DNA from: Malacoraja senta
Lineage: Eukaryota
Reading direction: 5' to 3'
DNA: 64,000 nucleotides
NCBI GenBank assembly: GCA_038087875.1
Contig: CM075979.1
Location: 5,270,001-5,334,000, forward strand
A program made the translations under genes and the position numbers. Of the stretch, positions 2,867-64,000 are shown one piece after another. The first letter of the stretch is position 1; every line of letters begins with the position of its first letter. The notes under the pieces were generated by a model. The model was not told the origin of the DNA. It did no database searches and saw only the letters and a program-made list of their open reading frames with translations.

Positions 2867-3066
2867 NNNNNNNNNNNNNNNNNNNNNNNNNNNNNNNNNN
2901 NNNNNNNNNNNNNNNNNNNNNNNNNNNNNNNNNNNNNNNNNNNNNNNNNNNNNNNNNNNNNNNNNNNNNNNNNNNNNNNNNNNNNNNNNNNNNNNNNNNN
3001 NNNNNNNNNNNNNNNNNNNNNNNNNNNNNNNNNNNNNNNNNNNNNNNNNNNNNNNNNNNNNNNNNN
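2867..3066. other. Assembly gap (200 N)
   Basis: Run of N. Confidence 1.
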
Positions 3067-18800: not shown

Positions 18801-21800
18801 CCTGAGGAACATGCATAAGGACCATCATCAATTTTGTACACGGAACAAACCAGTCGAGGACACGGGAAGTGTGTTCTTCTTGAGCTAAATCAAACACATT
18901 AGAATATGTGTAGGAAGGAACTGCATATGCTGGTTTAAACCGAAGATAAACACAAAGAGTTGGAGTAACTCAGCGAGGCAGGCAGCATCTATGGAGAGAA
19001 GGAATGGGTGACGCTTTGGGTCGGGACCCCTCTTCAGACCCCCTTCTGTGTCTACATTAGAGTGAGTATTTGTTTGTCATCTAAGCGTGACAATGCTGAT
19101 ATTAGTCATATGGTCCTTTTTGGTAATTTGATAAGAAAATGAATCTTGCACAAATGATGTCATTAAGATTTTTGCCTTTAATGAAAGACAACAGGCACAT
19201 CAACATGCAAGAAAATAGAATTCAATTATATTTTAATATTACAATCTTGCTTTTTGAAAGGCAATGAATAGGACTGCGGAAGAATGTCACTTACACACAA
19301 ATGTTCCATAGCTCATCCAGAGAACGAATGTGAACAGGAAAAACAGGAAGCTAACAAAATATCGCTGATTCCAAGCACCTGTTTTGTTAAAGTAAAAACA
19401 TTCTGTGACAAACGAATTGTAACATTTTGATGTTATCTAAGTGCTATGATACTATCTAAATGGCGTCAAGTTGGGAAAAGGGGAAGCACAACGGGATTTG
19501 GGGGGTCCTTGTACATTAGTTTATGAAAGTAAGCATGCAGGTACAGCAGGCAGTGAAGAAAGCGAATGGCATGTTGGCCTTTATAACAAGAGGAATCGAA
19601 TATAGGAGCAAAGAGGTCCTTCTGCAGTTGTACAGAGCCCTAGTGAGACCACAACTGGAGTATTGTATGCAGTTTTGGTCCCCTAATTTGAGGAAGGACA
19701 TTCTTGCTATTGAGGGAGTGCAGCGTAGGTTTACAAGGTTAATTCCCGGGATGGCGGGACTGTCATATGCTGAGAGAATGGAGCAGCTGGGCTTGTACAC
19801 TCTGAAGTTTAGAAGGATGAGAGGGGATCTCATTGAAACATATAAGATTGTTAAGGGCTTGGACACGCTAGAGGCAGGAAACATGTTCCTGATGTTGGGG
19901 GAGTCCAGAACCAGGGGCCACAGTTTAAGAATAAGGAGTAAGCCATTTAGAACGGAGACGAGGAAACACTTTTTCTCACAGAGAGTGGTGAGTCTGTGTA
20001 ATTCTCTGCCTCAGAGTGCGGTGGAGTCAGGTCCTCTGGATGCTTTCAAGAGAGAGCTAGATAGGGCTCTTAAAAATAGCAGTCAGGGGATATGGGGAGA
20101 AGGCAGGAACGGGGTACTGATTGGGGATGATCAGCCATGATCACATTGAATCGAAGGGCTCGAAGGGCCAAATGGCCTACACCTGCACCTAACTAACTCA
20201 GTTTTCGAAAACAAAATATTTCAAAAAAAAAGCATTTGGATCCAACCCAAAGAACTGGACAACCCAACATTGTATTTCGGTGATAATGAAAACTTGCTAT
20301 ATCTTGGAAGATGAATAAGCAGATGGAGTACTACTTCATTAGAGCACAACTAAAAGGCCCCTGGACTATAAATAGTGAAAAACACACAAGGTGGTTGCAA
20401 TAAAATGGTAACAGAAATTAGAATAGATATACAAATCAAAAAATATATATACACTCTCATTCCTCTGAGATTAGAATTATATTAAATTTAAAATATCGTA
20501 ATCAACGGGGCTGCATCTGCAAATCTTTGTCAAGTTTTGTAGCAAATGACAAGGGAAAGCTGGTTAGAGTGGGTTTGCATTTTGATTTGGGCTGATGAAA
20601 GTAGTTTCACCGGTGCTGCACAGATTCAGCGTTGTGACTACTCAAACCTCCCAAATGATGATTATGAAAGAAAGGCCAAGAGAGGAGAGGAGAGAGATTT
20701 ACTATCGTGGGTCCAGAAACAGAACAATTAAATTCTTACTTGCAGCAGCAACACAACAGGTTTGTAAACACATTGGCAAGACATTCGTGTGAAGAGACAA
20801 AAATTAGACTAGGCTTGAGAAACAAACTGACACTGGATGTCGCATAAACCATACTACAAGAAACTCGAGTGCTTTGGTTCCTTAAATAATAGGATTTTCG
20901 TCTGCATTCTAACTTAGAAATAACTTGCTCACTGCACATTCTTGATATATCCAAGCACAACTGGATTTTAAAGAATAACTATAATTTAGCAATTTATTAA
21001 GTGCAATGAAAAGCAAACAATGCAGATGGTTTGGAGATTAACGTAAAAGGGCATTGGCTACCATTATGCAATCCCCATACAGAAGTGACAAGATCGGCTA
21101 GAAAACCATAATTGAGCTGACCTAACCTTAACCATGACACTACAGTTCAAACAAGACCGGTTCCTGGAAGCATCCACCTTGTAACTCAGGGGTAACGACC
21201 AGTGTAGTTTGATTTATTTAGTCATTCCCTGATAACGAAAATTGCAGCATCTCACTGGTTTCTACTTGAAGGCCAACGGGACATTTTTAGCTTAAATTAT
21301 TTCCGCAACTATCGTTCAGAAGTCCAAGAGCTTGCGGATGATAGTCACTGAGAATGCCTTGTAACAAAAGATGACTCACCAATACAGCTTGCAATCCAAA
21401 CACAATGATGATCATACTTGGCCACACAGCAGTCGCAAATGGGACAGTGCTTAGATCGGAGAGGTTTCCGGACCTGAAAATATTTTAAAGCAAACATTTA
21501 TTTTTGCAAAAATTATGTACAACAGGCATCATAAAGGGAAATAGAAGGATCACAGTTGAAAATTATTACAATCACTAATATGGTTTTGTTGAGCAGTGGT
21601 TTTGTTGAGCAGTGGTATTTTGAGGATAATTACTGCAAAAAGCTAGTAGCACCACATGTGGTTAGGGGTTGAGTCAAATCATATTTGAAAACTCTAAGTC
21701 TTGTTCCCACAAATGCACTTGCTGATGACCATCCGATGAATCTATTTGAAGAGACACACTGGCAGAAGTTCTTTTAGGAAGAAAAATTGCTCTTCCTCTT

Positions 21801-33800: not shown

Positions 33801-36800
33801 GAAATTAAATTTGACAATTAACTTCAGGACTCTTCACAAAGTAATCAATGGATGACAATCCAGTACAAAACAAAGTTCAGTCTGTGAACCTTAGCTATGT
33901 GTAGGAAGGAACTGCAGATGCTGCTTTAAATCAAAGGTAGACACAAAATGCTGGAGTAACTCAGCAGGATAGGCAGCATCTCTGGAGAGAAGGAATGAAT
34001 GACGTTTCGGGTCGAGACCCTTCTTCAGACTGAGCTATGTTAGCTGTGTTATTGCAATGGAGTTCTGCAGCTTTTGAGGTTTGAGAAATTCCATCGCACA
34101 ACAATACTTTCAGTCCTCATGTCTCATACTGCTATGACTGAAATAGTAGTGACTGGGTGGGAACAGACATTTCATAACTGCATATGTGCACCAAAGCACA
34201 TTAACTTGAGGAAGAGCATGTAGATTAACTCAATACCTTTCCTACTGAAATAATGAAAGGCATTGATTTGAAATAAGGACAAACTGAACATACCTGACCT
34301 TTGGCTACAAGGTAAGCAATGATTGCCATTTGCTGGAATTGAACTGCAAGATGAAGACATGTGAATCCTTCCCTATCGACTAAGGAGGGGTCTGCTCCAT
34401 ACTTCATCAGTAGCACCATCATAGACAAGTGGCCTTGTCTGAAATAAAACAAAAGGACTTGAATATTGTTTTTAAAAATCCACTTTAACCTATTGATCTT
34501 TCAGCTGGCAAACAGTTCAGTATTTTTTGTTAACTGGAAAAAGGTTACATTTTATCTATTATAGATCCTCTGACACATCGTATGTTTTCATCATTGTGGT
34601 TTGAATATGAATGCAACTTCGAGCTACAGTTTACGTTGTAGCAGAAACCACATTTCCTTTATTAGAATATCCTGTTTGAGCTTTCACTTCTCACTCCTAC
34701 CATCTCAAACTGATGCACAGTTGCACAATTTTAGATTAGATATATTTTTGTGGAAACTTAAGTCTGCTTCTTCAGTACTATAGAAACATAGAAAATAGGT
34801 ACAGGAGGCCATTCGGCCCTTCGAGCCAGCACCGCCATTCATTGTGATCATGGCTGATCGTCCCCTATCAATAACCCGTGCCTGCCTTCTCCCCATATCC
34901 CTTGACTCCACTTGCCCCTAGAGCTCTATCTAACTCTCTCTTAAATCCTGAATGGGTTAGTGATGCCAAAGGAATTCATGTTTATAACATTTATTGGAGA
35001 GTACTGTTCACAGCAAAATGATGGATACATCCGTCCACTGTTCAATAAGTGAGGTTGGAAAAAAATAAAGCAAGAAATGGCTGCCCGGTGGCTTAGCGGG
35101 AGAGTTGCTGCTTACAGCACCGGAGATCCGGGTTCGATCCCAACTACGGGAGCTGTCTGTGTGAAGTGTGCACGTTCTCCCCGTGACGTTTCTCAGAGAT
35201 CTTCGGTTTCCTTCCACACTCCAACGACGTAGAGGTTTGTAGGTTAATTGGCTTGGTGTAAGTGTAAATTGTCCTGCGTGTGTAGGATAGTGTTAATGTT
35301 CGGGTATCGCTGGTTGGTGCGGATTCTGTGGCGAAGGGCCCGTTTCCATGCTGTACCTCTGAACTAAACTGGAACAAAAACACTGTCATGGTACTCCAGA
35401 ATCAATTCTCAGGGTTATGTGCAACCAAGACCAGAGTATAGAACACTGTACAAAACCATGAGGGGTAGATAGAGAAGGGGAATGCACACAGTACGTTTTC
35501 TGAGGTAAGATGAATGAAAACCTAGAGGGTGTTGTTTGAGGGGCAGGTATGTAAAAAGGAACCGGAGGTGCAATTTATTTCCCCTCACAGGTTGTGTGTA
35601 TATGGAATGAACTGCCAGATTAAGTGGTTGAGCCGTGTGCAGCGACAACAACAACATTTAATAGACATTTGGATAGGTACATGGATAGGAAAGGTTAAGA
35701 TGTCAAATGTGAGCAAATGGAACTAGTTTATTTGATCATCTTAGTTAATATGGACGAGTTGGCCCAAAAGGCATGTTTCCTGCTATATTACTTTACAACT
35801 TTGTATTTGTCATTTCGAAACAAGAAACGAAACCAACTCATTTATTTTTTGTAACACGGAAGAGATATATAAACAAACCAAGATTAAGAAGAATTTCATT
35901 AACAAGAGGAACTCAATTTCCAATTCCTATGATTACATCGCACAACACGATGTAATACAAGTACTGCTGATTAGGTTGAAACATTTTTAAATACTTGCAG
36001 TCAAACTTTAAGTAATAGTCAGCAAATTAAGATGTCTCCTGTCAAAAGATTATTATTTGCATCAGTATTCCAAATTCAGAGAATCATTGAATAGTTACAG
36101 CAGAGGCCAGTGTGCCCATCATGTTCAGACTGACTCCCCATCTCAGCCTTGCAAATTTTTCTTCACCGTTTATCTGTCCAATTCCCTCTCAACACGAACA
36201 TTTATGCTCTGTGCTCAAAGTTGGAAGATAGATGAATTCTAAAATGAATTCAATCAAAATGGTGAGATAAGAGATCAGAAGGTGACAGAAATAAATCTTT
36301 CCCACGTATATTTGGTAATGACATCTACTTTACAATACATTTTTAAAGCTTACGTTCAAATATTAAATATTTCTGGAACTCTACCTGGTCGCCCAGTGAA
36401 GAGCAGTTGAATTTAAATCTCCACCAAGCTGATCCACAATTGCACCTTTCGAAATATAGTAGCTGTAGATGGAGATGGGTACATTTAGTACAATATATGA
36501 ACAATGGTAAAGGGCCTGCCCCACGGGCATGCGGCAAGCGCGACCTAACCGGAAGCGGGGGCCGCGCGGAGGTTGAGTGATCCCCGTACAGGGCCTGTCC
36601 CACGAGCATGCGGCAAGCCCCACCAAACCGGAAGCGGGGGCCGTGCGGAGGTCGAGTGACGTCAAGACGGTGCGTATGGCGTCGAGGCGGTGCGCACGGC
36701 CTCGATGCGGCTGCGTACGGCGTCGAGGTGGTGCGCACGGCTGTCAATGCGACGCACACGGCCTCGATGCGGCAGGCCGTTGCCGCGCGTAATTTTTGAA

Positions 36801-39800
36801 CAATGTCACTTTTTCGGAGCCCCGCACGATGTCGGGACCAGCTCCGCACAACTCCATACGGCTCCGGCGATCGAAGTGGGACCGGCCCCGCGACCTCCGC
36901 ACGGCCCCCGCTTCCGGTTGGGTCGCGCTTGCCACATGGAGTTGCATGCCCGAGGGACAGGCCCTTAATGTTAATTTTTTTGGTGTATAATTTAAGAGTA
37001 CAAAAATAATAAAATATCTTACCTGACAAGCTCTGTTCGGTTATTGATAGCTGCCCAGTGAAGCAACGTCACATTTTCTTTGTCAGGCTGTCGGACATCA
37101 TAACCAGCTTCGATCAGCTCTTTACATCTGTCTATTATTCCATATCTGCAAAGTGTAAAATGCAATCTTAGAAAAAAATGGAGATAAAGCTGGACCACGA
37201 GTCTCCAAATTCAAAACTAAAATCCCGAGTAGCCCTTGTTTGGGCGCCTACAGGCGACTGCCAGGGACTAGTTTTAATCGAATTCACCTACGACTCCTGG
37301 CGACAACCCACGCCAGCACCTCCGTCAACCTCCAACATGCTGAAACTTTTGCGGCAGTCGCCTGTAGTCGCCCAAACAATCGCCTAAGTGGGACAGGCCC
37401 ATAAAGCTATCACATTTCAAATATCCTTTGTACCCTTCTCTTGATCTGTAGCTGGTATAACAAAAATAAATCAAATTATAACACATGCCAACAGAATTCA
37501 ATGAAAATGAACCCCTCATTGATATAAAAATCATGCTTTTATTGGATTTTTATTTTCATACCAACATCAGGCTTGATGCGATTGCACATGACATTTTGCA
37601 ATTTCTCAGATCATGTATACCCTCATTGTAACCTTCCCTCTTGTTTATTACCTCATGTTATCCAGTTTCAAACTCGATTCAACAAAGATCTTCCATCTTC
37701 TATATTTGCCATTTTATGCTTGCATATGGCTAGACATGCAAAAGCATTCACGGGTTTGAGTTTTTTCCTCAAGAGGGAAAGTAATTACATGAGATAGACA
37801 CAAAATGTTGAAGTAACTCAGCGGGTCATGCAGCATCTCAGGGGGGAAATGGAAAGGTGATGTTTTATCACCATTTTCTCTGGAGATGCTGCCTGAGCCG
37901 CTGAGTTACTCCAGCATTTTGTGTCTATCTTTGGTATAAACCAACATCTGCCATTCCTTGTTATTACAAGAACTTTGCAGCCAAGATAACCTCAAGAGTT
38001 GACATTTACATACCAGTTCATAGCAAATACCCACTCGAACTTACTGTGTGGCTCTTACAATGTCCCAATTACTATGATCTTCCATGAAGGCAAGATCACT
38101 GTGATGTTTATCTGGACTCGTGGCCTGACTCGAACTGTTATATTGCTCCTGGTGCTTTTGAGCTCCATGATATCCATGAGAACAATTGTGCTGACACTGT
38201 AAAAAAACATTAGTTTAATTACACCAAATGAGACAATGAATAAGTAAAAAAAAATCTTAGAGCAGCGTGAAAACAACTGATACTGCTGGCCGCAATATTA
38301 CAGTCGTAAGGAATCAAAGTATTATTTGCATTATAAAATGGAAGAGAAAGGCTGTGTAAATTACACTGGCTGAAAGTTATATGAGAATTGTCAAACTGTT
38401 TCTCCTCCTATTTCATATTCCCAGAATACTCTACATAAATTTCTTCCTTAATAAAAAGAGTAAACCCTGGAAATATTCACCAGGTTCCGGCAGTATCAGT
38501 GGAGAGAGAAACAGAGTAAACACTTTAGGTCAATGAGATTTCATCAGATCTCATTTGCACTCATTTCTCTTCTCAGCACAGATACATTTTCCAAAGCAAG
38601 GAAACAACAACAAAATATATATACAAGCGTGCAAATGCAGTTACTTGAAGCACTAATAAACAATAGATACGATGTGCACCAAAAAATAATGTAATTAAAA
38701 TCACCCATATTTGTTCTATTCAACCATCACTCACATGGTTATCCATTGTTGCAACCTGAGCCAGTAGTGTAATTAATCTGGTACTATAATTAGAGCATTG
38801 GCCTCCCAGGCAATATCCATACTCTCGAGTCCAGATAGATACAAGATACAAAGGATTTATTAGCCAAGTATGTAAGAACATACAAGGAATTTGATTTGCA
38901 ATACAGTCAATAAATAATAGGTGCAGGAGTAGGCCATTCGGCCCTTCAAGCCTGCACCGCCATTCAATGTGATCATGGCTGATCATCCACAATCAGTATC
39001 CTGTTCCTGCCTTCTCCCCATGTCCCCTGACTCCGCTATCTTTAAGAGCTCTATCTAACTCTCTCTTGAACGCATCCAGGAAACGGGCCTCCACCGCCTT
39101 CCGAGGCAGAGAATTCCACAAACTCTGTGTGAAAAAGTGTTTCCTCATCTCCATTCTAAATGGCTTACCATCTTAAAATGTGGCCCCTGGTTCTGGACTC
39201 CTCCAACATCAGGAACATGTTTCCTGCCTCTAGCATGTCCAAACCCTGAATAATCTTATATATTTCAATAAGATAACCTCTCATCCTTCTAAATTCCAGA
39301 GTATACAAGCCCAGCCGCTCCATTCTATCAACATATGACAATCCCGCCATCCCGGGAATTAACCTGGTGAACCTTACGCTGCACTCCCTCAATAGCAAGA
39401 ATATCCTTCTCAAACTTGGAGATCAAAACTGCATCCAATACTCCAGGTGTGGTCTCACTAGGGCCCTGTACAACTGCAGAAGGGCCTCTTTGCTCCTACA
39501 CTCAACTCCTTGTTATGAAGGTCAACGTGCCATTCACTTTTTTCACTGCTGCTGTACCTGCATGCTTACTTTCATTGACTGATGAACAAGGACCCCAGAT
39601 CCCGTTGTACTTCCTCTTTTCCCAATTTGATACCATTTAGATAGTAATCTGCCACCAGTTTTTGCCACCAAAGTGGATAACCTCAGATTTATCCACATTA
39701 AACTGCATCTGCCAAGCATCTGCCCACTCACCCTACCGGTCCAAGTCACCCTGCACCCTCATAGCATCCTCTTCACAGTTCATACTGCCACCCAGCTTTG

Positions 39801-42800: not shown

Positions 42801-45800
42801 GTCAAATATCACGCCAAGGTTTTTGATGTGAGGTTTGAGTAATGGGGTAAGGCTTCCAACGCTGCCTGCTATCGTTTTGATTGAGTCCGAGGGGCCGAGA
42901 AGGATGACCTCAGACTTACTCTCGTTTAGTTGGAGGATGTTCTGAGCCATCCAACACTTTATATCCTCGAGGCAGTGGATAAGGTTAAGTAGATTTGATC
43001 GGTTGTTAGGCTTCAGGGGGAGATAGAGTTGCGTATCGTCTGCACAGCAATGGAAGGAAATGCCGTTGCCTTTGAATGACTTGGCCTAAGGGGACGCTGG
43101 CCTTGGGGTCCAGCACCAACCTGATTTTCCCAGTCTACCTGCATGTTGAAATCTCCCATAACAACCATAGCATTACCTTTATGACATGCCAATTTTAACT
43201 CTTGATTCAACTTGCACCCTTATATCCAGGCTACAGTCATACCAAAAAAGCAGCAAGACACACAACCACATAAAAATCAATATAAACATCCACCACAGTG
43301 CACTGAGATGGAAGGCAATAACGTATTATCTTCTTCACAGTAGATAATACATATATCAATACTAATCAAATCAATCAAGTTAAAATGTTTAAATCTAAAG
43401 CTAATTCAAATGTTGAAAATATGGAGCAGATCAATAAGCATCTGGCAAAATACAAGTAAAAATTCCAGTTTGAAGACTTTGTCAAAACAAGGGAATAAGA
43501 AAAATAATTTGTTTTAAATTGCAGAGAGAAAGTAGGATGGAGAGGACAAAGGGATTATCTCTTATGGCTAGAGTTGCCATGGGGCTAAGTTAAAGGTGGT
43601 TACCTAGTTAACAGGTTAATCAGGCTGGTAAAAGAGAAAACAACCGTGTACAAAGTATTAAAAATCGTGACACGAAAAGCTATAGGAAAAATCCAACATG
43701 TCACTCAATGCTCGTTGAAGGAGAGAAACTCCGCAACATTAGAAGGATGACTCACAGCGAAATGGACCAGTTCAGATACAGGCACAAAAAAAGCATTGAT
43801 TAATTTGATATTGAATCGGGAAGGTGAAACGAGTCAAGAGTGAAGATGAGGTCCTCCTGCTCAAACTTACAATGAGACTCTTATGAAAGTGTAGAAGGCC
43901 ACTGACAGGTCAGAGTAGGAGATTGATCATTAAAGTTACAAGCAACAGGAAACTAAGGGTCATACCTGCAGACTGAAGTTTGTACTGCTTCTTTCCTGAG
44001 TAAAGGCTCAACAGCTCTCCATCAACACACTTATTTATCTGTTTACAGTTGTTCTCATATTGAACAATTCCTTCTACACATGTTATCCATATCAACTATG
44101 GACCCAAGCTATGGCTGTCTTTTTGTGGATGAGGTTAGATCTTATTAGATGCAGGGCGAGTTGGTCAACTCAATACAAAATCTGCTCGATGGAAGGAGTC
44201 AGAGGGTGGTAGTGGAAGATTCTTTTTCATATTGGGGGCATCGTGTGCCACGGGTCCTGTACTTGGTCCATTTATTCGTCATCTATATTAACGATTTGGT
44301 GAGAATGTTGCTGGCATGGTTAGGGTTATCTAAGATTATAGAAGGATCCAGATTAATGGGCAAGTGGTCCAAGGAATGGCTGATGGAATTTAATTGAATA
44401 CGTGTGAAGTGTTGCATTTATGGCAAGTTAAACCAGGACAGCACTTACACAGAAAATAGCAAGTTCCTGGAGTTGTCAAATAAAAAGACCCAAGGGGTAC
44501 TAGTACATAGTTTATTGAAAGCAGCCACACGGGTAGACTGGAGGTGGTGCTTAGCACGCTTGGCTTTATTGGTCAGGAGATTGGTCAGGAGTACAAGAGT
44601 TGGGATGCCCAAACCACTATCAATTAATCCACATTTAGAGTATTGTATGCAGTTTTTAATTGCTTAGCCATATGAAGGATGAGCTGGAATGCGTGCAGAA
44701 AAGATTCATCAGGGTGTAAATCAGGACTGGAGGTTTTGAGTTAGAAACATAAACTGAAAAGAGTCACAGAGCTAAACAGCAAAGAGACAGGCCCTTGTCA
44801 ATTCTTCCCTTCCCTCCCATACCACCCCCTCCCTCCCCTGGTAACTTTCCCCTTGCAACCGCAAGAGATGCAACACTTGTCCCTTCACCTCCCCCCTCCA
44901 CTCCATTCAAGGACCCAAGCAGTCGTTGTCCAGGTGCGACAGAGGTTCACCTGCATCTCCTCCAACCTCATCTATTGCATTCGCTGCTCTAGATGCCAGC
45001 TGATCTACATCGGTGAGACCAAGCGGAGGCTTGGCGATCGTTTCGCCAAACACCTCCGGTCGGTCCGCAATAACCAACCTGAACTCCTGGTGGCTCAGCA
45101 CTTCAACTCCCCCTCCCATTCCGTATCTGACCTCTCTGTCCTGGGTCTCCTCCATGGCCACAGCGAGCAACACCGTAAATTGGAGGAAATGCACCTCATA
45201 TTCCGCTTGGGNNNNNNNNNNNNNNNNNNNNNNNNNNNNNNNNNNNNNNNNNNNNNNNNNNNNNNNNNNNNNNNNNNNNNNNNNNNNNNNNNNNNNNNNN
45301 NNNNNNNNNNNNNNNNNNNNNNNNNNNNNNNNNNNNNNNNNNNNNNNNNNNNNNNNNNNNNNNNNNNNNNNNNNNNNNNNNNNNNNNNNNNNNNNNNNNN
45401 NNNNNNNNNNNGATAAATGTGAGGTTAACCACTTTCGTGCCAAGAACAGGAAGGCAGATTATTATCTGAATGTTGCCAGATTAGGAAAAGGGGAGGTGCA
45501 ACAAGACTTGCACATCAGTCACTGAATGAAAGCATGCACGTACAGCAGGGAGCTAATGGCATGTTGGCCTTCATTGCGCGAGGATTTGAGTTTAGGCGCA
45601 AGGAGATCCTACTGCAGTTGTACACGGCCCTGGTGAGACCGCACCTGAAGTATTGTGTGTAATTCTGGTCTCCTAATTTGAGGAAGGACATTATTGCTAT
45701 TGAGGGAGTGCAGGTAGGTTCACCAGGTTAATTCCCGGGATGGCGGGAACTGACATATGATGAAAGAATGGGTCGATTGGGCTTGTATTCACTGGAATTT

Positions 45801-54838: not shown

Positions 54839-54949
54839 CCAATCAGGGCGGGGAGATCGCTGGGAGGCGACACCCTTTCTGGCGCTGCCGTGTGAAGCGC
54901 TCTTCCTCCCGTGTATCAAAGTCCATTGCCGAGAGAGTGCGAGCGAGGT
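54839..54949 (+). promoter_or_regulatory. Candidate promoter / non-coding first exon of the LDH-like gene
   Basis: CCAAT (54839-54843) next to a GGGCGGGG GC box (54846-54853) in a locally CpG-rich patch, followed by GAG|GTAGGA donor at 54948. Confidence 0.45.
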
Positions 54950-55557
54950 AGGACTGAACCTTGGATGCAGCTTTGGGAATAGTTTTGAAGGGGGAACCGA
55001 GAAGGTTGCGAAGACAAACACTCGCTGAAAGGTGGAGAGGACGTCGTCAAAACAGGTCAGATCTGTATTTCTAAACTAGACTAAACTGCAATATGTTGAA
55101 GATAGACACAAAATGCCAGAGTAACTCGGTGGAACAGGCAGCATCTCCGGATAGAAGGAATAGGTGACGTTTCGGGTCGAGACCCTTCTTTAGACTGAGA
55201 GTCAGGGGAGAGGTTTTGGGGGGGGGGGGGGGTTGGGGGCACAGAGATAAGGAAGGGTAGGGAATGAAAACGAGACATCAAAGGGATGCGGCTCAAAGAA
55301 AATGCTTAATAACATATTGCATGTAGAAACAAGGAACTGCAGATAATAATAATAATAATACATTTTATTTATTGTTGGTTTATACCAAAAATAGACACAA
55401 GTGCTGGTCGGATGATGGTTTAGTTCACAACTGTGGCAGTGAAATATGTTCTGCTGAGTCAGGGATGAAGTTGGTCTGGCCTTCAGTTCAGAGTTCACTG
55501 CTGCTGCAAGATCAGAGGCCAAGCATCAAGTGTAAAATCAAATCAAGATTAGTTTGA

Positions 55558-55773: not shown

Positions 55774-56253
55774 TCAGAAAGCATTTTCAATGTAATAAAA
55801 AGGAACTGCAGGTACCAGTTTAGAAACATAGTAACATAGAAAATAGGTGCAGGAGGAGGCCGTTCGGCCCTTCGAGCCAGCACCGCCATTCATTGTGATC
55901 ATGGCTGATCGTCCCGTTTATACCGAAGATAGGCACAAAGTGCTGGAGTAACTCAGCGGGTCAGGCAGCATCTCTGGAGAAAGCAGATGGGTGACATTTC
56001 GGGTCGGGACCCTTATTGAAGAAACGAAACGTCACCTGTCCATGTTCTCCTTGACCCGCTGAGTTTCTCCATGCAAAAATAAAATGGAAATATTAACATC
56101 ACACTTGAGGCACAGATTCAGAAAATACTTTGTTGCCAATTGTCACTATTTTTAAAAATAACTTTGCTCATTTTATTTGCACCATATGAGTCAATGTCTT
56201 TTTCTCCTTTTTAGATTTCTGATCTTTTGTAGTTGACAGCACAATTAAAGACG

Positions 56254-56379
56254 ATGAGTATACAAGATGATCTGTTCAAAGTGATAGTCCCACCAGTGTC
56301 TTTCAAACCTTCTTCAAAGGTCTCAATAGTGGGCGTTGGGGAAGTTGGCATGGCATGTGCTGTTGTCATTGCACAGAAG
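56254..56379 (+). CDS. LDH-like first coding exon (N-terminal arm + GxGxxG)
   Basis: ACGATGA start, AAG|GTAACA donor, 126 nt; upstream acceptors at 56214 or 56232. Confidence 0.92.
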
Positions 56380-59300
56380 GTAACATATAACATTCAGTAT
56401 TGAGTGTACTCGTTTTAATTTTTTATCTATTTTTGTTAAAGATTCAGACATAATAAACAAATTAATGAACTAGCAAAGTGTATTTATATTTCACCTTTCT
56501 GAACCATATTTATTGAAATTAGTCAGGAAACAACTAATCCTATTAGTGTCAGAACCTGAACTACTATCCTGCAGTCCTGAAATACTAACTTTGACCAGAC
56601 TTTATTGGCTTTATCTTGCACTAAACTTTATTCCCTTAGCGTGTATCGGTACACTGTGAATTGCTCGATTGCAACCATGTATTGTCTTTCTGCTGGCTGG
56701 TTAGCACACAACAAAAGCTTTTCACTATACCTCGGTACACGTGACAGTAAACTAAACTGAATTGAACTGAGAACCTAGGAGGACTCAAAATGACAATCAC
56801 TCAGCTTTTCAAAATAGACTCAAGCGTAATTACTTTGACAGGAGCTACCTAGGAATTCCAGATGCGTAGATATTGAAGAGGGGTGCAGATTCATCTCTGA
56901 TATGAAACATACTTCAACATTGTGTTGGAAGGAACTGCAGATGCTGGTTTACACTGATGATAGACCCAAGATGCTGGAGTAACTCAGCGGGTTAGGCAGC
57001 ATCTCTGGAGAAAAGGAATAGGTGATGTTTCGGGTCGAGAACCTTCTTCAGACTGAGAGTCAGGGGAGAGGGAGGGGGAAACTAGACTACCTCTAGTTTC
57101 ATTCTTACCTGACTGTCAGTCTAAAGAAGGGTCTCGACCCGAAGCATCACCTGATGCTGCCTGACCTGCTGAGTAACTCCATTCAGCAACATTGGTTGTC
57201 CCAATGCTCACAAAGGCCTTGAGACGAACTAACTTTCTTGACGACTATATAAGCATTTGAAGTATTCTTACAGTGTTGCCTCAGCCATGTCAGAATATAT
57301 TAGTCAATTTGCACATAACATACTCCCACTGACAGCGCTGGGATAATAGGTAAATAATTTGTTTCAATGGCCTGGGCTGAGGGACATTACTGCCTATTAA
57401 ATAGATGTTAATGCCAAATAAAAGGATTTAAGAGACAGGGATTCCTGGTTACAAAAACCTTAATTTTGATATGTTCAGATAATATGGCTTTTGCCATTGA
57501 GAAATATTGCGCTTTGGTTGTCAATTGGCTGAAGCAATATTCTTAGCAAGGTTTTTGCAGATGGGTACATTTTGAACACGGTAGCAAATTTGACTCTTGC
57601 CTCAGAATCTCGGTTTCGATGGTAAAATTATCTCTGACATTGTTAACTAAAACCTTGATAGCAGCTTCTAGCTTCTGTTCTTGCACAGTTAAATACAGAA
57701 TGAAAACAACTTTCATTTACATGGCACCTTTAACGCAGCAGTGATGGTCTTTGGCACTGGCCCGTATGTGTCAAAGATGGATGCCAACTGTTGGTGTCTG
57801 GACCAGCGATTGGGCATTCTTGATGAAAGGAAAATGTAAATATCTGATCACTTAGAATCACCTCAACAATACACTTCTGACATGGAAACATCACAAAGAC
57901 AAGTCTAAATCCAGTGTTTTCCATTTATTCCCTTTTACAGAGTTTAGCCGACGAGTTGGTCCTTGTCGATAGGCGGGCAGACAAACTTAAGGGGGAATCA
58001 ATGGATTTGATGCATGGTAGTCTGTTTATGAAATGCAGAATAAAAGCCGATACAGGTTTGTGATGGGTCATGGGATTTATTGTGATATAATTCTGTTCAA
58101 TATTTGAAGAAACATTAGATTTTAAGCTTGTCTTTGTCCATCTACCTATTTATTGTCTATCTGTATTTCTGACTGCCATCATAAGTTATGTACAATGGAA
58201 ATAGTGTAATCTTCAGGCAATAATATATAGTATTAAATATATGTTAAATATTATTGTATATATTAAATATATGTTAAATATTATTTTTAGAATACAATAT
58301 GTTCTGCCAGAGAAGGAATCAGATACTATATTATCAATAATATTATATGCTAAATATATATATTTATGAGGAAGTTGCCAGGACCCAAAGGCCTGAGTTA
58401 TAGGAAGAGCTTGAGCAGACTACGACTTTATTCCTTTGAGCACAGGAAGATGAGGGGTGATCTTAAAGAGGTGTGTTAGATCACGAGTGGAATAGATAGG
58501 GTAAATGCACAGTCTTTTACCCAGAATAGGGGAATCAAGAACCAGAGGACATGGGTTTAAGGTGAGGGGGATAGGGAGGTAGATTTAATAGGAACCTGAG
58601 GGGCACCTTTTTCACACAAAGGGTGGTAGGTATATGGAACGAGCTGCCAGCGTAGCTAATTGAGGCAGGAACTAACACAACACTTTAAAAATATGGATAT
58701 AATAGATTTAGAGGGATATGGGCCAAATGCAGGCAGGTGTGCCAAGTGTAGTTGGGGCATGTTGGTCGGTGTGGGCCAGTTGGGCCAAAGGGCCTGTTTC
58801 TAGGCTGTCTGACTCGATGACTCTCACAAATGCTCATTTCAGTTTGTTCCATGAGCTCCCATGCTTATTAAATAGAGTGATACAGCACAGAAAATGACCA
58901 ACTCGTCCATACTGACCAAAATGCCAACCTGAGCTAGTCACTTTAACCTGTGTTTGGCCCTCATCCCTCTCGATCTTTCCTTTCCATATACCTGTCCAAA
59001 TGCTTTTAAATGGTGTAATAGTTTCCACTTCTACCATTTCCTCTGGGAGCTAGTTCTGTGTACACACCACCTTCTGTATGGAAAACCTGCTCCTCAGGTT
59101 CCCTTTAAATCTTTACCTTCTCACCTTTAACTTATTGCCCATAGCTTCAGTTTATCCTACCTTGAGAAAAAGACTGTGACCATCCACCTTTTCTTTGCCC
59201 TTTTTGATATTATAAACCTTTTCTTTACTCCAGGGAAAATGGTGTCTGCTTATCTCTTTAAGGAGTTCCTGCTTATAACTCGAGTCCTGGAGTCCAGGTA

Positions 59301-61751
59301 ACATCCTTGTGAAATGTTACTGCACTCTCATATCCTCCCTATAATTTGACGACCAGAATTGCACACAATACTTCAAGTGCAGTCTCGCCAACGTCTTGTA
59401 CAACTGTAACATGATGTCCCACCTCTTATGCTCAATGCCAATGAAGCGAAGCATAACATATTCTTTCTTCACCATCCTGTCTATACCGGGCTTTGTAATA
59501 TAGTTCCAATCTAATAATAATCTCCCTCTGTCCCAGAATTCCAGTATGAGCAAGAGATGCCATTCCTTCCTCGAGACTAACTCAGTGGCATAAGCCTCCT
59601 GCCACTCAGTAGCACTAAAATATCTTGGTGGTAACTGGATTGGTGACAGCAGAGATTATCTGCCTTCATAAAGTCGTTGCAGCAAGCAGCACGGGAAGGG
59701 ACTTGTGAATGGGTGGGCAGAAAGCTGCTTGTTCAGTGAGCAATAAGCAGCTCTGGCAGTGAAGCCATCTTCCAACTAGTGGTAAATGCCGGCAGCAAAT
59801 ACTTGTCAGTGAAGAAGGTTGACTCTCTGAATTGACTGACTGGAAGATACGCCCCACTGAGCCCACACTGACCATCGATCACCCTATTACACTAGTTATC
59901 TGTTATTCTGCAGTTGTACAGAGCCCTAGTGAGACCACACCTGGAGTATTGTGTACAGTTTTGGTCCCCTAATTTGAGGAAGGACATTCTTGCTATTGAG
60001 GGAGTGCAGCGTAGGTTTACATGGTTAATTCCCGGGATGGCGGGACTGTCATATGCTGAGAGAATGGAGCAGCTGGGCTTGTACACTCTGGAGTTTAGAA
60101 GGATGAGAGGGAATCTCATTGAAACATATAAGATTGTTAAGGGTTTGGACACGCTAGAGGCAGGAAATGTGTTCCCGATGTTGGGAGAGTCCAGAACCAG
60201 GGGCCACAGTTTAAGAATAAGGAGTAAGCCATTTAGAACGGAGACGAGGAAACACTTTTTCTCACAGAGAGTGGTAAGTATGTTGAATTCTCTGTCTCAG
60301 AGGGCAGTGGAGGCGGGTTCTCTGGATGCTTTCAAGAGAGAGCTAGATAGGGCTCTTAAAAATAGCAGAGTCAGGGGATATGGGGAGAAGGCAGGAATGG
60401 AGTACTGATTGGGGATGATCAGCCAAGATCACATTGAATGGCGGTGGTGCTGGCTCAAAGGGCCGAATGGCCTACTCCTGCACCTATTGTCTATTGTCTA
60501 TTGTTATTCCACTTCCTCATCCACTCGCTACACACTAGGGGCAATTTTCCAGAGGCCAATTAATCTACAAACCTGCAAGTACTTGGGATGTGGGAGGAAA
60601 CCAGAGCACCCAAAGGAAACTCACTGGAAGAACATGCTAAACTCCACACAGAAAGTGTCTGAGGCTGGGATCAAACCCAGGTCCAGTCAATGGGCTTGCA
60701 TCTCCCCACTAAACAGGAGTCACTTTCACCCATATACGATAGATCAGGATATAAGCCATTCAGAAGCATCTCTGCACTGGATACGTTCTGCACTGCTTTA
60801 ATGCTTTTGCTGACTTACTAAAGTAGAGGGAAGAAATTGAATTCCTGTTTGAACGACCAAAGCTTTTTAAAAGTAACACTTCCAAAAGCTTGAAGAGCTA
60901 CCGAAGAGCTTGCTGATTGTTTCATAAGACCGTGACTGATTTGTTTTTTAAAAACTTGAAAACAGGTTGTGTCAACTCATCAACATTTTTTCTCTTGAAT
61001 TCAGCAGTTCTTAGAACTTTGGATAACATTACCCAATATGACTTTCAGTTTTTTTTAGTTCAGAGTTACGGCGCGGAAACAAGCCCTTCGGCCCACCGAC
61101 TCCGCACTGACCAGTGATCCACACACATGAACACAATAACACACCGGGGACAATTTACATTTCTGCCGAGCCAATAGACCTACAAACCTGTAGGTCTTTG
61201 GGGTGTGGGAGGAATCCGAAGATCTCGGAGAATACCCACACAGGTCACGGGGAGAACGTACAAACTCCATAAAGATAGCACCCATAGTCAGGATTGATCA
61301 CGGGTCTCTGGCGCTGGAGGCAGCAACTCTACCGCTGCACCACCGTGCCGCCTGGATTCTCACTCCTTGTTCTTAAATGAGTGAAATTCTATGTGGGTTT
61401 TAATGAATGGTGTCAGATACTGTGCAGATTGGCAGTGCTGAGGAATTATGTTATAATAGAAAAAAGGGAGTAAAGTGTTTGCTGAGTCCAAGTCTGGTTG
61501 CATTGCTTGCATTTAAAATACCTACCTTTCATATTTAACTGATTGATGTTTTTCTTTCCCCAATTACCATTCTACAGATTTTAAAGTTACACAAGATTCT
61601 AAGATTTGCATTGTCTGTGCTGGTGTGCGGATGAAAGGACAAAAAACAGATGCAAATCAGCTAAAGGGCAACGTTGCTCTCTACAAGGAGATAATCCCTC
61701 AATTGGCTAAGCACAATCCATCTGCCGTTTTGCTGATCGTCTCTCAGCCAG
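56254..61751 (+). CDS. L-lactate dehydrogenase-family protein (divergent LDH paralog), 5' part: 3 coding exons, gene continues beyond window
   Basis: Spliced 415 nt: [138 protein letters not shown]. Rossmann GxGxxG, ADEL.LVD, KLKGE.MDL.HGSLF; exon sizes 126/115/174 and phases match vertebrate LDH (126/118/174). Confidence 0.92.
56920..57180. mobile_element. Penelope-associated inverted pseudo-LTR pair
   Basis: Inverted arms with hammerhead-like cores. Confidence 0.75.
57941..58055 (+). CDS. LDH-like second coding exon
   Basis: ccttttacag acceptor, G|GTTTG donor, 115 nt. Confidence 0.92.
58365..59485. mobile_element. Two CR1 3' fragments in tail-to-tail orientation (58365-58822 +, 58870-59485 -)
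   Basis: CR1 3' motifs on both strands. Confidence 0.75.
59905..60502 (+). mobile_element. CR1 LINE 3' portion (young)
   Basis: 164-aa ORF nearly identical to the 19523-20140 copy; (ctattgt)n tail. Confidence 0.92.
61055..61331 (-). mobile_element. HE1-like SINE
   Basis: Reverse complement of family consensus. Confidence 0.85.
61578..61751 (+). CDS. LDH-like third coding exon (active-site loop)
   Basis: tctacag acceptor, G|GTAAAA donor, 174 nt, open frame. Confidence 0.92.
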
Positions 61752-62462: not shown

Positions 62463-64000
62463 AAACTTGGAGCCACTGATCCAGATAAATGAGTGATCCA
62501 ATATCACCATGGCTGATAGGGAATTTAAATTCAAATAAGTCAAAAGACATCTGGAATTTAAAAATAAAAATGTTTTTATCTACTAACTTTCAAACCCCTT
62601 GTAAATTGTAAAATTCTTATAAAATACATCTGGTTCACCCATTTCTTTCAGGGAAGGAAATCTCTTCTTTTTTCTTGTCCATGAGTGACTTCAGACCCAT
62701 CAAAATGGTTGACTTTTAACTACATCCACTATTTAGAGGTGGACAATGTTAAACGTTATTCCCTTTATCCTGTATCTGCACACTGTGGACGGCTTGATTG
62801 CAATCATGTACAGTCCTTCCACTGACTGGATAGCACGCAAACTTTTCACTGTCCCTCGGTACACGTGACAATAAACTAAACTAAACTTAACAAATACTAG
62901 CATTGCCGCCCATGTTCACATTGTGTAATCCAGTTACTGCGATGGAAATGTTTTATAGATTCCAGATTATTTTAACAAACTGAATTTACGTAACCCAGTT
63001 GGCAAGGTGAAAAATTACCATTGGCATCACAACGTTTTGGATTATTAGTCCAGTAATGTAATCACTGTGCCAAAATCTGGAATACTGTACATCACATCGC
63101 AATTTTATTTGTTTCAGATATTTTAGATATTTTACTGGAGTAAAGATTTGAACTTGCATGCACAAGGAATTGCAGATGCTGGTTTACAAAAAAAAGACAC
63201 ACCAGGGTTTGTGTCTTTTATTTAAACCTGAATATTTTCCTTTATAATGATTACTAATTGTTTAATTGTTCCAACAGTATTTTCTATCCTTCCTCATTTC
63301 TTACAGATATTGGCTCCTTGCCAGGCAATCTGTGCCTTCTGGTTCAACATCCGTTGTGCTAGATGTTTCATGCAAGTTCATGAAAGAGTTTTATGGCCTG
63401 TAAAACAATACATTGATTTTGAAGTAGTTAAATACAGAAGCCAAAGTGCACTAATTGCAGTCCTATGATTGATCCCAGGAATAGATAAAGAACATACACA
63501 GAGGGCTGGGGTAACTCAACAGGTCAGACATTTCTGGTCGGGTCCCTTTCTGGGTCACTGAAAATTCACCTATCTTCTCCAGCAATGCTACCTGACCCTC
63601 TGAGTTGCTCCAGCATTGTGTGTCTTTTTTTTGTAAACCATCATCTGCAGTTCTTTGTTTCTACACAAGACTGGGTAATCTCGTTATTAAAGTGTAATAG
63701 AATCATAGAACGCTGAAACAGGCCCTTCAGTGAAGGCAATTTGCCATGATCATTTCACCTCCAACTGTGGAGAGTGAATTGATCATTCACCCCCCCCCCC
63801 CCCACCCCCGCTATATTTTTTGAATGTGGGGAGTAACCTGTGAATCTGGAGGAAACCCACTTAGTCAAAGCGAGAATGTGTAAACTGCATGCATGATTGA
63901 AGAAAGGACATTGACCTACCTGCGGCATCTTCAAGTTGTCCCTTGGAATCTTTAGCATGTGTTTAAACAGGAACAGTGGCTAACGAGCAGTGGTGATACC

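What the first reader, a model, noticed from the sequence alone, without database searches (positions are those of the whole stretch)
61619..61750. LDH paralog with a rewritten catalytic loop (Arg106->Asp): new-substrate enzyme or pseudoenzyme
Seen: the mobile loop is [18 protein letters not shown], aligning without gaps to canonical AGARQQEGESRLNLVQRN. The specificity residue Q100 (classical Q102) is Met (61631-61633), the carbonyl-polarising R106 (classical R109) is Asp (61649-61651), and N138 of SNP is Gln (61745-61747). Established: R109 is essentially invariant and required for efficient catalysis in LDH/MDH, and residue 102 sets substrate choice. The three exons are open with intact splice sites and conserved scaffold motifs, which argues against simple decay. 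Inference: a cartilaginous-fish LDH-fold protein that no longer works as a lactate dehydrogenase. It may act on a different (possibly cationic or bulkier) substrate, serve as a regulatory subunit in LDH tetramers, or play a structural role such as a crystallin. H193, R169 and D166 lie outside the window and could not be checked.
Basis: partly seen in the sequence, partly recalled or inferred. Interest (0 to 1): 0.85.

Follow-up and report, generated by a model that had tools for sequence, protein, structure and literature searches.

The report
Catalytically dead LDH paralogue of skates
The window holds the first exons of a transcribed lactate-dehydrogenase-like gene, shared by skates and sharks, that has lost the catalytic histidine and arginine; it is most likely a non-enzymatic "pseudoenzyme", so its database label as an ordinary LDH is misleading.

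Summary
Three LDH-type coding exons lie on the + strand (56254-56379, 57941-58055, 61578-61751). The loop reads [18 protein letters not shown], with Met for Gln100, Asp for Arg106 and SQP for SNP.

- **Orthologues.** 327-aa proteins exist in three other skates (84-91% identical over the window's 138 residues) and two sharks (54-59%). NCBI auto-names them "LDH A/B chain-like".
- **Catalytic residues.** The exon carrying His193 lies just past the window. In all six orthologues His193 is Gln. Arg106 is Asp in skates and Lys in sharks. Asp166, Arg169, the GxGxxG motif and Asp52 are kept.
- **Gene model.** Leucoraja spliced transcripts show a stand-alone gene with a 5'UTR exon and an in-frame stop before the ATG. 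It has no UEV domain, so it is not UEVLD.
- **Synteny and phylogeny.** It lies head-to-head with an ankyrin-DHHC gene in skates and a shark. It branches outside LDHA+LDHB, next to a catalytically intact sturgeon "LDHA-like" paralogue.
- **Selection.** dN/dS among skates is about 0.77, so constraint is weak. An intact frame in three skates is still very unlikely under neutrality (P about 3e-6).

Verdict: a real, conserved, probably inactive LDH paralogue, and a new member of a known kind. Its function is unknown, and moderately interesting.

The parts
54893..55055 (+). Non-coding first exon (5'UTR) of the LDH-like gene, with donor GT at 55056
   Evidence: The 5' ends of three Leucoraja spliced transcripts (L002-L004) align here at 94-95% identity and then jump to 56213/56215. 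The junction reads AAAACAG|GTCAGA. The 5' end of the exon is only as far as the transcripts reach.
56215..56379 (+). Exon carrying the start codon (ATG 56254; coding part 56254-56379, 42 codons, Rossmann beta1-GxGxxG). An in-frame TAG lies at 56230-56232, upstream of the ATG.
   Evidence: Acceptor TTTTTAG|ATTTC and donor AAG|GTAACA. Pfam Ldh_1_N positions 2-23. 88% identical to Amblyraja residues 1-42. Transcript mapping.
57941..58055 (+). Coding exon 2 (115 nt, phase 0 to phase 1), which includes the NAD-ribose-binding Asp (LVLVD)
   Evidence: AG at 57939-40 and GT at 58056-57. Pfam Ldh_1_N positions 25-58. 92% identical to Amblyraja residues 42-80. The exon has the same 115-nt size in three other skates.
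61578..61751 (+). Coding exon 3 (174 nt), holding the rewritten active-site loop (61619-61672) and SQP (61742-61750). Met for Gln100 at 61631-33, Asp for Arg106 at 61649-51, Gln for Asn138 at 61745-47.
   Evidence: AG at 61576-77 and GT at 61752-53. Gapless alignment to solved LDH chains. 91.5% identical to Amblyraja residues 80-138. The exon has the same 174-nt size in relatives.

Best explanation
The window holds the 5' half (UTR exon plus coding exons 1-3 of 7) of a stand-alone, transcribed paralogue of L-lactate dehydrogenase found in skates and sharks. It keeps the LDH fold, the LDHA-type intron positions and the dinucleotide-binding motif, but it has lost the catalytic machinery. His193, the proton donor/acceptor, became Gln before sharks and skates split. 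Arg106 became Lys in sharks and Asp in skates. Skates additionally lost Gln100, Asn138, Asp195, Tyr239 and, in part, Thr248. Most likely it cannot reduce pyruvate or any other 2-oxoacid and works as a non-catalytic LDH-fold protein (a pseudoenzyme).

Shown here: the sequence features, the orthologues, the splicing, the conserved neighbourhood, a frame kept against neutral expectation, and a position outside LDHA and LDHB.

Inferred: loss of activity, from the established roles of His195 and Arg109 in the classical numbering. Also inferred are retained NAD(H) or adenine-nucleotide binding, from GxGxxG and Asp52, and the mode of action. My best guess for the mode of action, at about 30%, is a nucleotide-binding subunit that forms homotetramers or mixed tetramers with LDH-A/B and so modulates or scaffolds them.

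In this window's species the His193 position itself is unread. It lies in the next exon, beyond base 64000.
For: - **Exons, loop and splice sites:**
- **Orthologue family.** 327-aa proteins occur in Leucoraja, Amblyraja, Rhinoraja, Pristiophorus and Heterodontus. Identity to the window over 138 residues is 126, 125, 116, 82 and 75.
- **Catalytic-site table.** His193 is Gln in all six. Arg106 is Asp (skates) or Lys (sharks). Gln100 is Met/Val (skates). Asn138 is Gln (skates) and His or Asn (sharks). Asp166, Arg169, the three Rossmann glycines and Asp52 are kept.
- **Active-site erosion.** Of 87 columns invariant in 24 canonical LDHs, sharks keep 71-73 and skates 62-63. The losses cluster in the loop, Asn138, His193, Asp195, Tyr239 and Thr248.
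- **Gene structure.** Seven coding exons of 126/115/174/174/106/124/165 nt occur in three skates, and each CDS translates exactly to the annotated protein.
- **Expression.** Three Logan contigs from separate sequencing runs carry the uninterrupted 984-nt ORF and map exon by exon to the Leucoraja genome. Eleven further contigs of 1.4-1.9 kb encode close variants.
- **No upstream coding exons.** The UTR exon and an in-frame TAG precede the ATG.
- **Frame maintenance.** Intron alignments of the same loci predict 8.5 frameshifting indels and 4.3 stops in 981 nt across three skates. None is seen, giving P about 3e-6.
- **Fold constraint.** Substitutions fall preferentially at sites that also vary in canonical LDHs: p=9e-9 between sharks, 4e-8 skate versus shark, 0.03 among skates.
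- **Structure.** The AF2 model of the Amblyraja protein has mean pLDDT 89.7 and TM 0.94-0.95 to LDH-A/B models.
- **Conserved neighbourhood.** An Ank+DHHC gene lies head-to-head in Amblyraja, Rhinoraja and Heterodontus, and the matching ankyrin exon is in the window.
- **Literature.** Arg109, Asp168, Arg171 and His195 stay conserved even in family members with changed substrates (PMC4109310).
Against: - dN/dS among skates is 0.75-0.77, with bootstrap intervals of 0.46-1.46 that include 1. The ML estimates scatter around or above 1, so amino-acid constraint in skates is weak.
- The enrichment of substitutions at tolerant sites is only marginal within skates (p=0.03).
- Loop residue 98 (Arg99 of LDHA) is Arg, Gln, Pro or Leu among near-identical transcripts. 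This fits a dead site but also fits a protein of little importance.
- No activity, binding or tissue data exist.
- Expression was shown for Leucoraja-type sequences, not for this window's species.
- The catalytic His position was not read in this genome.
- No shark coding DNA could be fetched, so long-range dN/dS is untested.
Confidence: 0.75

Rival explanations
1. The gene has been losing its function in skates. It is still transcribed and open, but effectively drifting, so the rewritten loop is erosion and not adaptation to any role.
For: dN/dS is 0.75-0.77 with intervals including 1, and dN is 0.5-0.75 of intron divergence. Skates have lost about 10 more canonical-invariant residues than sharks. 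The branch leading to skates is long, at 0.49. Several amino-acid polymorphisms exist, including three alleles at one loop codon.
Against: No frameshift or stop occurs in three full skate CDS, where about 13 disabling events are expected (P about 3e-6). Exon sizes and splice sites are identical in four skates. Correctly spliced full-length mRNAs occur in many runs. The length of 327 aa has been kept since the split from sharks.
Confidence: 0.13
2. It is a neofunctionalised enzyme. The new loop (Met/Val100, Asp106) and Gln193 form an active site for another substrate or another chemistry, possibly a cationic or bulky ligand.
For: The fold, the dinucleotide-binding motif, Asp166 and Arg169 are retained. 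Asp at position 106 is fixed in all four skates. Substrate switches through this loop are well known in the family (PMC4109310).
Against: Members with changed specificity still keep Arg109 and His195, and both are gone here. Gln cannot act as the acid/base. Six of the 18 loop positions differ among four skates, and one is tri-allelic, which is not the pattern of a newly tuned site. Sharks carry a different loop (Gln100, Lys106), so no common new site exists in the family.
Confidence: 0.08
3. It is the lactate-dehydrogenase-like half of UEVLD (UEV3), the known vertebrate fusion of a TSG101-type UEV domain with an LDH-like domain, or a mis-annotated piece of it.
For: This was my first hypothesis. 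UEVLD is a vertebrate LDH-family gene that gained a UEV domain (PMC2926785; PMC12513931). The ankyrin-DHHC neighbour resembles ZDHHC13, which in human lies near LDHA/UEVLD; that placement is from my memory and was not tested.
Against: No UEV-like motifs occur anywhere in the window. Transcripts start with a non-coding exon, and an in-frame TAG precedes the ATG. NCBI models in four species are 327 aa with only the Ldh_1_N and Ldh_1_C domains. A UniProt entry named 'UEV and lactate/malate dehydrogenase domains' is only 29% identical to the skate protein, against 45-48% for ordinary LDHs.
Confidence: 0.02

Closest known systems
Vertebrate L-lactate dehydrogenase A and B chains (EC 1.1.1.27)
   Same: It has the same two Pfam domains and the same fold: TM 0.94-0.95 and 45-48% identity. 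The intron positions match: my recollection of LDHA coding exons is 126/118/174/174/118/124/165, against 126/115/174/174/106/124/165 here. GxGxxG, Asp52, Asp166 and Arg169 are kept.
   Different: The catalytic His193 is Gln, and Arg106 is Asp or Lys. In skates Gln100, Asn138, Asp195 and Tyr239 are also replaced. There are deletions of 1 and 4 codons. It branches outside the LDHA+LDHB clade, and joining it to LDHA is rejected (AU p=0.0004).
Sturgeon 'L-lactate dehydrogenase A chain-like' (Acipenser ruthenus XP_033910189 and Huso/A. oxyrinchus relatives, 332 aa)
   Same: It is the best sister group in the tree (98/99 support). It is also the best BLAST hit of the window's 138 residues, gapless at 49% identity. 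It shares the one-codon-shorter exon 2 region relative to LDHA/B.
   Different: The sturgeon protein keeps every catalytic residue and lacks the 4-codon deletion. The sister relation is favoured but not proven: the alternative with sturgeon outside is not rejected (p=0.16).
UEVLD / UEV3 LDH-like domain
   Same: It is a vertebrate LDH-family member that is not known to act as an LDH, and it descends from a stand-alone LDH-like ancestor (PMC2926785).
   Different: UEVLD carries an N-terminal UEV domain and this gene does not. Identity to a UEVLD entry is only 29%.
Insect LDH-like paralogues (Hymenoptera 'LDH A-like 6A'/'LDH-like' groups; scarab and carrion beetle 'LDH B chain-like')
   Same: These are independent LDH duplicates in which the same positions are hit. 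His193 is Gln, Ser or Tyr; Arg106 is lost; SNP becomes SQP, SKP or TRP; Asp166 and Arg169 are kept.
   Different: They are unrelated duplications inside the insect LDH clade. Their function is equally unknown.

Membership tests
Catalytically competent L-LDH (LDH/MDH superfamily) | Ldh_1_N + Ldh_1_C two-domain fold | tested here: met
   The window exons hit Ldh_1_N. Orthologues carry both domains. The AF2 model has pLDDT 89.7 and TM 0.95 to LDH-A.
Catalytically competent L-LDH (LDH/MDH superfamily) | Dinucleotide-binding GxGxxG and the acidic residue at the end of beta2 (Asp52) | tested here: met
   VGVGEVG and LVLVD are in the window. They are conserved in all orthologues.
Catalytically competent L-LDH (LDH/MDH superfamily) | Catalytic His195 (His193 of human LDHA) | tested here: not met
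   It is Gln in 4 skate and 2 shark sequences. In this genome the codon lies beyond base 64000, so this is inferred from orthologues that are 84-91% identical.
Catalytically competent L-LDH (LDH/MDH superfamily) | Mobile-loop Arg109 (Arg106) | tested here: not met
   GAT (Asp) at 61649-61651. It is Asp in all skates and Lys in sharks.
Catalytically competent L-LDH (LDH/MDH superfamily) | Asp168 and Arg171 (Asp166, Arg169) | tested here: met
   Both are kept in all six orthologues. They were not readable in the window.
Catalytically competent L-LDH (LDH/MDH superfamily) | Specificity residue Gln102 (Gln100) | tested here: not met
   Met at 61631-61633. It is Met or Val in skates, and Gln is kept in sharks.
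UEVLD (UEV3) | N-terminal UEV domain fused to the LDH-like domain | tested here: not met
   No UEV motifs occur in 64 kb. A 5'UTR exon and an in-frame stop precede the ATG. The 327-aa models carry LDH domains only.
UEVLD (UEV3) | LD domain closer to UEVLD than to ordinary LDHs | tested here: not met
   Identity is 29% to a UEVLD entry against 45-48% to LDH-A/B. No tree with UEVLD sequences could be built.
Pseudoenzyme (dead paralogue kept as a gene) | Homologous fold with catalytic residues replaced | tested here: met
Pseudoenzyme (dead paralogue kept as a gene) | Open reading frame kept by selection across species | tested here: met
   The length is 327 aa in sharks and skates. P about 3e-6 for no disabling change in three skates.
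Pseudoenzyme (dead paralogue kept as a gene) | Amino-acid sequence under purifying selection (dN/dS clearly below 1) | tested here: inconclusive
   dN/dS is 0.75-0.77, with a CI of 0.46-1.46 among skates. The site pattern supports fold constraint, strongly for sharks and weakly for skates.
Pseudoenzyme (dead paralogue kept as a gene) | Transcribed and correctly spliced | tested here: met
   Logan contigs L002-L004 carry the whole ORF and map exon by exon. This was shown for Leucoraja, not for this window's species.
Pseudoenzyme (dead paralogue kept as a gene) | No catalytic activity | not testable with these tools
   This needs recombinant protein and assays.
Pseudogene | Stops, frameshifts or lost splice sites | tested here: not met
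   None occurs in the three window exons or in three full orthologous CDS.

The most novel reading that the evidence does not exclude
The elasmobranch gene and the intact sturgeon 'LDHA-like' gene are survivors of a third, ancient jawed-vertebrate LDH lineage that split off before LDHA and LDHB separated. That lineage could be the same stand-alone 'UEVLD ancestor' that later gained a UEV domain in another copy. In elasmobranchs it was converted about 300 million years ago into a non-catalytic, nucleotide-binding LDH subunit. That subunit would regulate LDH tetramers or serve another binding role, and its fast evolution in skates would reflect adaptation and not decay.
Probability: 0.15. Interest if true: 0.65.

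Novelty: new member of a known kind. Interest (0 to 1): 0.45.

Why it matters
LDH is a textbook enzyme, and vertebrate LDH evolution (A, B, C) is a textbook case of isozyme divergence. A further paralogue has been kept since before sharks and skates split. It sits outside LDHA/LDHB and has lost the proton-relay His and the loop Arg.

- **Evolution.** It adds a natural, long-lived 'dead LDH' to that story. It gives a stand-alone counterpart to the poorly understood LDH-like half of UEVLD.
- **Annotation.** Databases call these proteins 'L-lactate dehydrogenase A/B chain-like', which would mislead metabolic reconstructions or isozyme counts in elasmobranchs.
- **Convergence.** The same residues are replaced independently in hymenopteran and beetle LDH duplicates. 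This suggests a repeatable route from LDH to a non-catalytic protein. The skate and shark proteins are easy to express and test.

The weak amino-acid constraint in skates limits the claim. The function may be minor or partly lost there.

Tried and rejected
1. **UEVLD hypothesis.** I rejected it after a motif scan, transcript mapping and the 29% identity to a UEVLD entry.
2. **Single-exon searches.** phmmer of exon 3 against 1.8 billion representatives gave only canonical LDHs at or below 52% identity and a few unrelated divergent LDH-likes. The word-indexed search with the exon alone found nothing because of its length filter.
3. **Following the 'SQP' hit P0039.** It led to a beetle paralogue, not an orthologue.
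4. **Building a full-length query from the exons by reference.** MAFFT overlaid the pieces when no template was present or the template was too distant. Local simulations guided the choice of an ant pseudo-LDH template (A7). That query finally pulled out the elasmobranch family.
5. **Protein-atlas look-ups.** They were uninformative beyond 'LDH'.
6. **AFDB Swiss-Prot search.** It lists only 30 rows, all ordinary LDHs, so it gave no UEVLD comparison.
7. **Run accessions of the transcripts.** None of the three appears in any paper held, so tissue is unknown.
8. **YN00 dN/dS.** It crashed. The ML pairwise estimates are unstable at this low divergence.
9. **Heterodontus DNA.** It could not be fetched, so there is no shark codon analysis.
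10. **The search of earlier findings.** It had nothing for this place or these words.
11. I did not type the 138-residue joined peptide into any database tool, because it has no reference. It would also have been too short for the length filter.
Full report
**1. The observation**

The + strand of the window carries three LDH-like coding exons.

| Exon | Coordinates | Size | Notes |
|---|---|---|---|
| Coding exon 1 | 56254-56379 | 42 codons | starts at an ATG; donor GT at 56380 |
| Coding exon 2 | 57941-58055 | 115 nt | AG before, GT after |
| Coding exon 3 | 61578-61751 | 174 nt | AG before, GT after |

Each exon hits Pfam Ldh_1_N at successive profile positions. Joined, they give an open 138-residue N-terminal half of an LDH.

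Exon 3 aligns without gaps to residues 83-139 of solved LDH-B and LDH-A chains, with a best E-value of 7.6e-9.
- [18 protein letters not shown] lies opposite AGVRQQEGESRLNLVQRN.
- Met (61631-33) replaces Gln100.
- Asp (61649-51) replaces Arg106.
- SQP replaces SNP, with Gln at 61745-47.

**2. Finding relatives**

Direct searches with single exons returned only ordinary LDHs at about 50% identity. I then built a profile from the window's exons laid on a distant template (A7). That search recovered a family of 327-aa proteins:
- Leucoraja erinacea, XP_055505164, named 'LDH A chain-like'.
- Amblyraja radiata, XP_032894587, named 'LDH B chain-like'.
- Rhinoraja longicauda, XP_078271646.
- The sharks Pristiophorus japonicus and Heterodontus francisci.
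- A dozen unnamed contigs from public sequencing runs.

The window's 138 residues match 126, 125, 116, 82 and 75 positions of the Amblyraja, Leucoraja, Rhinoraja, Pristiophorus and Heterodontus proteins. Intron divergence from Leucoraja and Amblyraja is about 5%. The window therefore comes from another skate, and its own protein was not in the database.

**3. Gene model**

In three skate genomes the protein is encoded by seven coding exons of 126/115/174/174/106/124/165 nt, and each reconstructed CDS translates exactly to the annotated protein. As far as I recall, LDHA has 126/118/174/174/118/124/165, which sums to 332 codons plus a stop. The intron positions are thus those of LDHA, with a 1-codon and a 4-codon deletion.

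Three Leucoraja contigs (L002-L004) carry the uninterrupted ORF and map exon by exon to the genome, so they are spliced mRNAs. Their 5' ends map in the window to a non-coding exon at 54893-55055 (donor GT) and then to 56215. An in-frame TAG at 56230-32 precedes the ATG. tblastn finds only coding exons 1-3 in the window. Exon 4 lies 2.4-4.4 kb after exon 3 in the relatives, which puts it just beyond base 64000 here.

**4. What the missing exons say**

In all four skate and both shark sequences the catalytic His193 (classical His195) is Gln: GEQGYG in skates, GEQGDE in sharks. The full picture is below.

| Residue (human LDHA numbering) | Skates | Sharks |
|---|---|---|
| His193 | Gln | Gln |
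| Arg106 | Asp | Lys |
| Gln100 | Met or Val | Gln (kept) |
| Asn138 | Gln | His or Asn |
| Asp195 | Tyr | Asp (kept) |
| Tyr239 | Gln | His |
| Thr248 | Ile or Thr | Thr (kept) |
| Asp166, Arg169 | kept | kept |
| Rossmann glycines, Asp52 | kept | kept |

Of 87 alignment columns invariant in 24 canonical animal LDHs, sharks keep 71-73 and skates 62-63. The losses concentrate in the active-site loop and the catalytic and substrate shell.

Boucher et al. (PMC4109310) note that even family members with altered specificity keep Arg109, Asp168, Arg171 and His195. Losing two of these four, including the acid/base, argues for loss of dehydrogenase activity and against a change of substrate. The loop is also unstable. 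Six of its 18 positions differ among four skates. Residue 98 (Arg99 of LDHA) is Arg, Gln, Pro or Leu among near-identical Leucoraja-type transcripts, in combinations that look like segregating alleles.

**5. Is it under selection?**

Pairwise dN/dS among the three full skate CDS is 0.75-0.77 by NG86, with bootstrap intervals of 0.46-1.46. dN is about 0.5-0.75 of intron divergence.

Three further lines of evidence argue against a decaying gene:
- **Frame maintenance.** Introns of the same loci accumulate enough small indels and substitutions to predict about 8.5 frameshifts and 4.3 stop codons in 981 nt over the three-skate tree. None is present, giving P about 3e-6.
- **Conserved architecture.** Exon sizes, splice sites and the 327-aa length are the same in sharks and skates.
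- **Fold constraint.** Substitutions fall preferentially where canonical LDHs also vary: p=9e-9 between the two sharks, 4e-8 skate versus shark, but only 0.03 among skates.

The AlphaFold model of the Amblyraja protein is confident (mean pLDDT 89.7; lower in the loop). It superposes on LDH-A/B models at TM 0.94-0.95. The picture is a protein whose fold and full length are kept while its active site has been released from constraint. The release is most advanced in skates.

**6. Place in the family**

In a maximum-likelihood tree of 47 LDH-family proteins:
- The window and the elasmobranch proteins form a clade with 100/100 support.
- That clade is sister to a sturgeon 'LDHA chain-like' protein that keeps all catalytic residues (98/99).
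- Together they sit outside the LDHA+LDHB clade (97/99).

Forcing the elasmobranch clade to join LDHA is rejected (AU p=0.0004). Forcing it to join the LDHB-like rows is marginally rejected (p=0.04). Placing the sturgeon outside is not rejected (p=0.16). The gene is therefore not a recent copy of LDHA or LDHB, despite its database names. The exact sister relation is only favoured. The one-codon-shorter exon 2 is shared with the sturgeon protein and invertebrate LDHs.

The gene lies head-to-head with an ankyrin + DHHC palmitoyltransferase gene in Amblyraja, Rhinoraja and Heterodontus. The window has the matching ankyrin exon at 34228-34500 on the minus strand. Its best natural match among solved structures is ZDHHC17. 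The upstream flank is collinear with the other skates.

**7. UEVLD**

I first suspected the LDH-like half of UEVLD. That gene descends from a stand-alone LDH-like ancestor that gained a TSG101-type UEV domain (PMC2926785; PMC12513931). This gene is not UEVLD:
- No UEV motifs occur in the window.
- The mRNA starts with a UTR exon and has a stop before the ATG.
- A UniProt entry named 'UEV and lactate/malate dehydrogenase domains' is only 29% identical, against 45-48% for ordinary LDHs.

I could not obtain UEVLD sequences for a tree. A deep common origin of the two lineages therefore remains open.

**8. How it most likely works**

Shown: an expressed, conserved, LDH-fold protein without the catalytic His and loop Arg.

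Inferred from the established mechanism: no hydride-transfer catalysis. His195 is the proton donor/acceptor paired with Asp168, and Arg109 polarises the carbonyl.

Inferred from retained GxGxxG and Asp52: it may still bind NAD(H) or an adenine nucleotide.

Guess, at about 30%: it assembles into tetramers, alone or with LDH-A/B, and acts as a non-catalytic, nucleotide-binding or modulating subunit. A structural or moonlighting role is equally untested.

**9. Comparison and novelty**

The closest known things are:
- LDH-A/B: same fold and gene structure, but the active site here is dead.
- The sturgeon LDHA-like paralogue: the likely sister, and intact.
- UEVLD's LD domain: a non-LDH member of the family, fused and far more divergent.

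Independent insect duplicates in Hymenoptera and beetles have replaced the same residues: His193 to Gln, Ser or Tyr, and SNP to SQP, SKP or TRP. I found no paper on the elasmobranch gene. It exists only as automatic annotations that call it an LDH chain. It is a new member of a known kind, a pseudoenzyme paralogue of a metabolic enzyme. It is not a new kind.

**10. Verdict**

- Confidence is 0.75 that this is a conserved, transcribed, catalytically dead LDH paralogue.
- Interest is moderate at 0.45. It would be higher if a regulatory role or a third ancient LDH lineage were demonstrated.
- The main caveats are the near-neutral dN/dS in skates, the absence of tissue or biochemical data, and the fact that the His193 codon of this very genome lies just outside the window.

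Noticed in passing
window 34228-34500 (-), and about 48.3-48.8 kb (-) for its first coding exon: There is an ankyrin-repeat exon of a ZDHHC13/17-type palmitoyltransferase gene (Pfam Ank families). Its best natural match among solved structures is ZDHHC17/HIP14. The gene runs head-to-head with the LDH-like gene, about 6 kb from its 5'UTR exon. The same arrangement is seen in Amblyraja, Rhinoraja and Heterodontus. Whether it is the ZDHHC13 or the ZDHHC17 orthologue was not settled.
   Followed up: partly
proteins P0273-P0350, P0146, P0147, P0039 (not in the window): Hymenoptera have two groups of LDH-like paralogues, and scarab and carrion beetles have one. In these the catalytic His is Gln, Ser or Tyr, the loop Arg is lost, and SNP is SQP, SKP or TRP, while Asp166 and Arg169 are kept. 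This is an apparently convergent route to dead LDHs. The proteins are annotated as 'LDH A-like 6A' or 'LDH B chain-like'.
   Followed up: partly
proteins P0203, P0270-P0272 (sturgeons): Sturgeons carry a catalytically intact 332-aa 'LDHA chain-like' protein that is only about 66% identical to fish LDHA and to insect LDH. It groups with the elasmobranch dead LDHs outside LDHA+LDHB. A protein-atlas cluster of 51 chordate 'LDH A chain-like' proteins of 332 aa may be the same lineage. This could be an undescribed third vertebrate LDH lineage.
   Followed up: partly
proteins P0330, P0379, P0381-P0391: Leucoraja-type transcripts show several amino-acid variants in many combinations: Q/P/L at residue 98, V282I, V135A, S16A and others. 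They look like segregating polymorphisms and include a tri-allelic codon in the former active-site loop. One contig (P0385) has an ORF extended 19 residues upstream, because Leucoraja lacks the in-frame TAG that the window has at 56230-32.
   Followed up: no
window 19.4-20.2 kb, 38.9-39.7 kb, 40.3-43.1 kb, 45.4-46.1 kb, 53.2-54.0 kb, 59.9-60.5 kb: The window holds many fragments of reverse-transcriptase/LINE-type ORFs and repeated copies of one element, for example 19451-20191, 38908-39726 and 59906-60496. The same element also occurs in the flanks of the other skates' loci.
   Followed up: no
window 47.7-49.2 kb: A GC-rich, low-complexity stretch gives long spurious ORFs in several frames on both strands (Pro/Gly/Arg-rich, up to 484 codons). 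It lies around the expected 5' end of the DHHC gene and may be a CpG-island-like promoter region.
   Followed up: no
window 2867-3066 and 45212-45411: There are two runs of 200 N (assembly gaps or masks). They were left untouched.
   Followed up: no
Heterodontus locus (no DNA), downstream of the LDH-like gene: In the horn shark the gene spans about 45 kb, against about 12-13 kb in skates. It is followed on the opposite strand by a PR/SET + C2H2 zinc-finger (PRDM-type) gene of 1136 aa.
   Followed up: no
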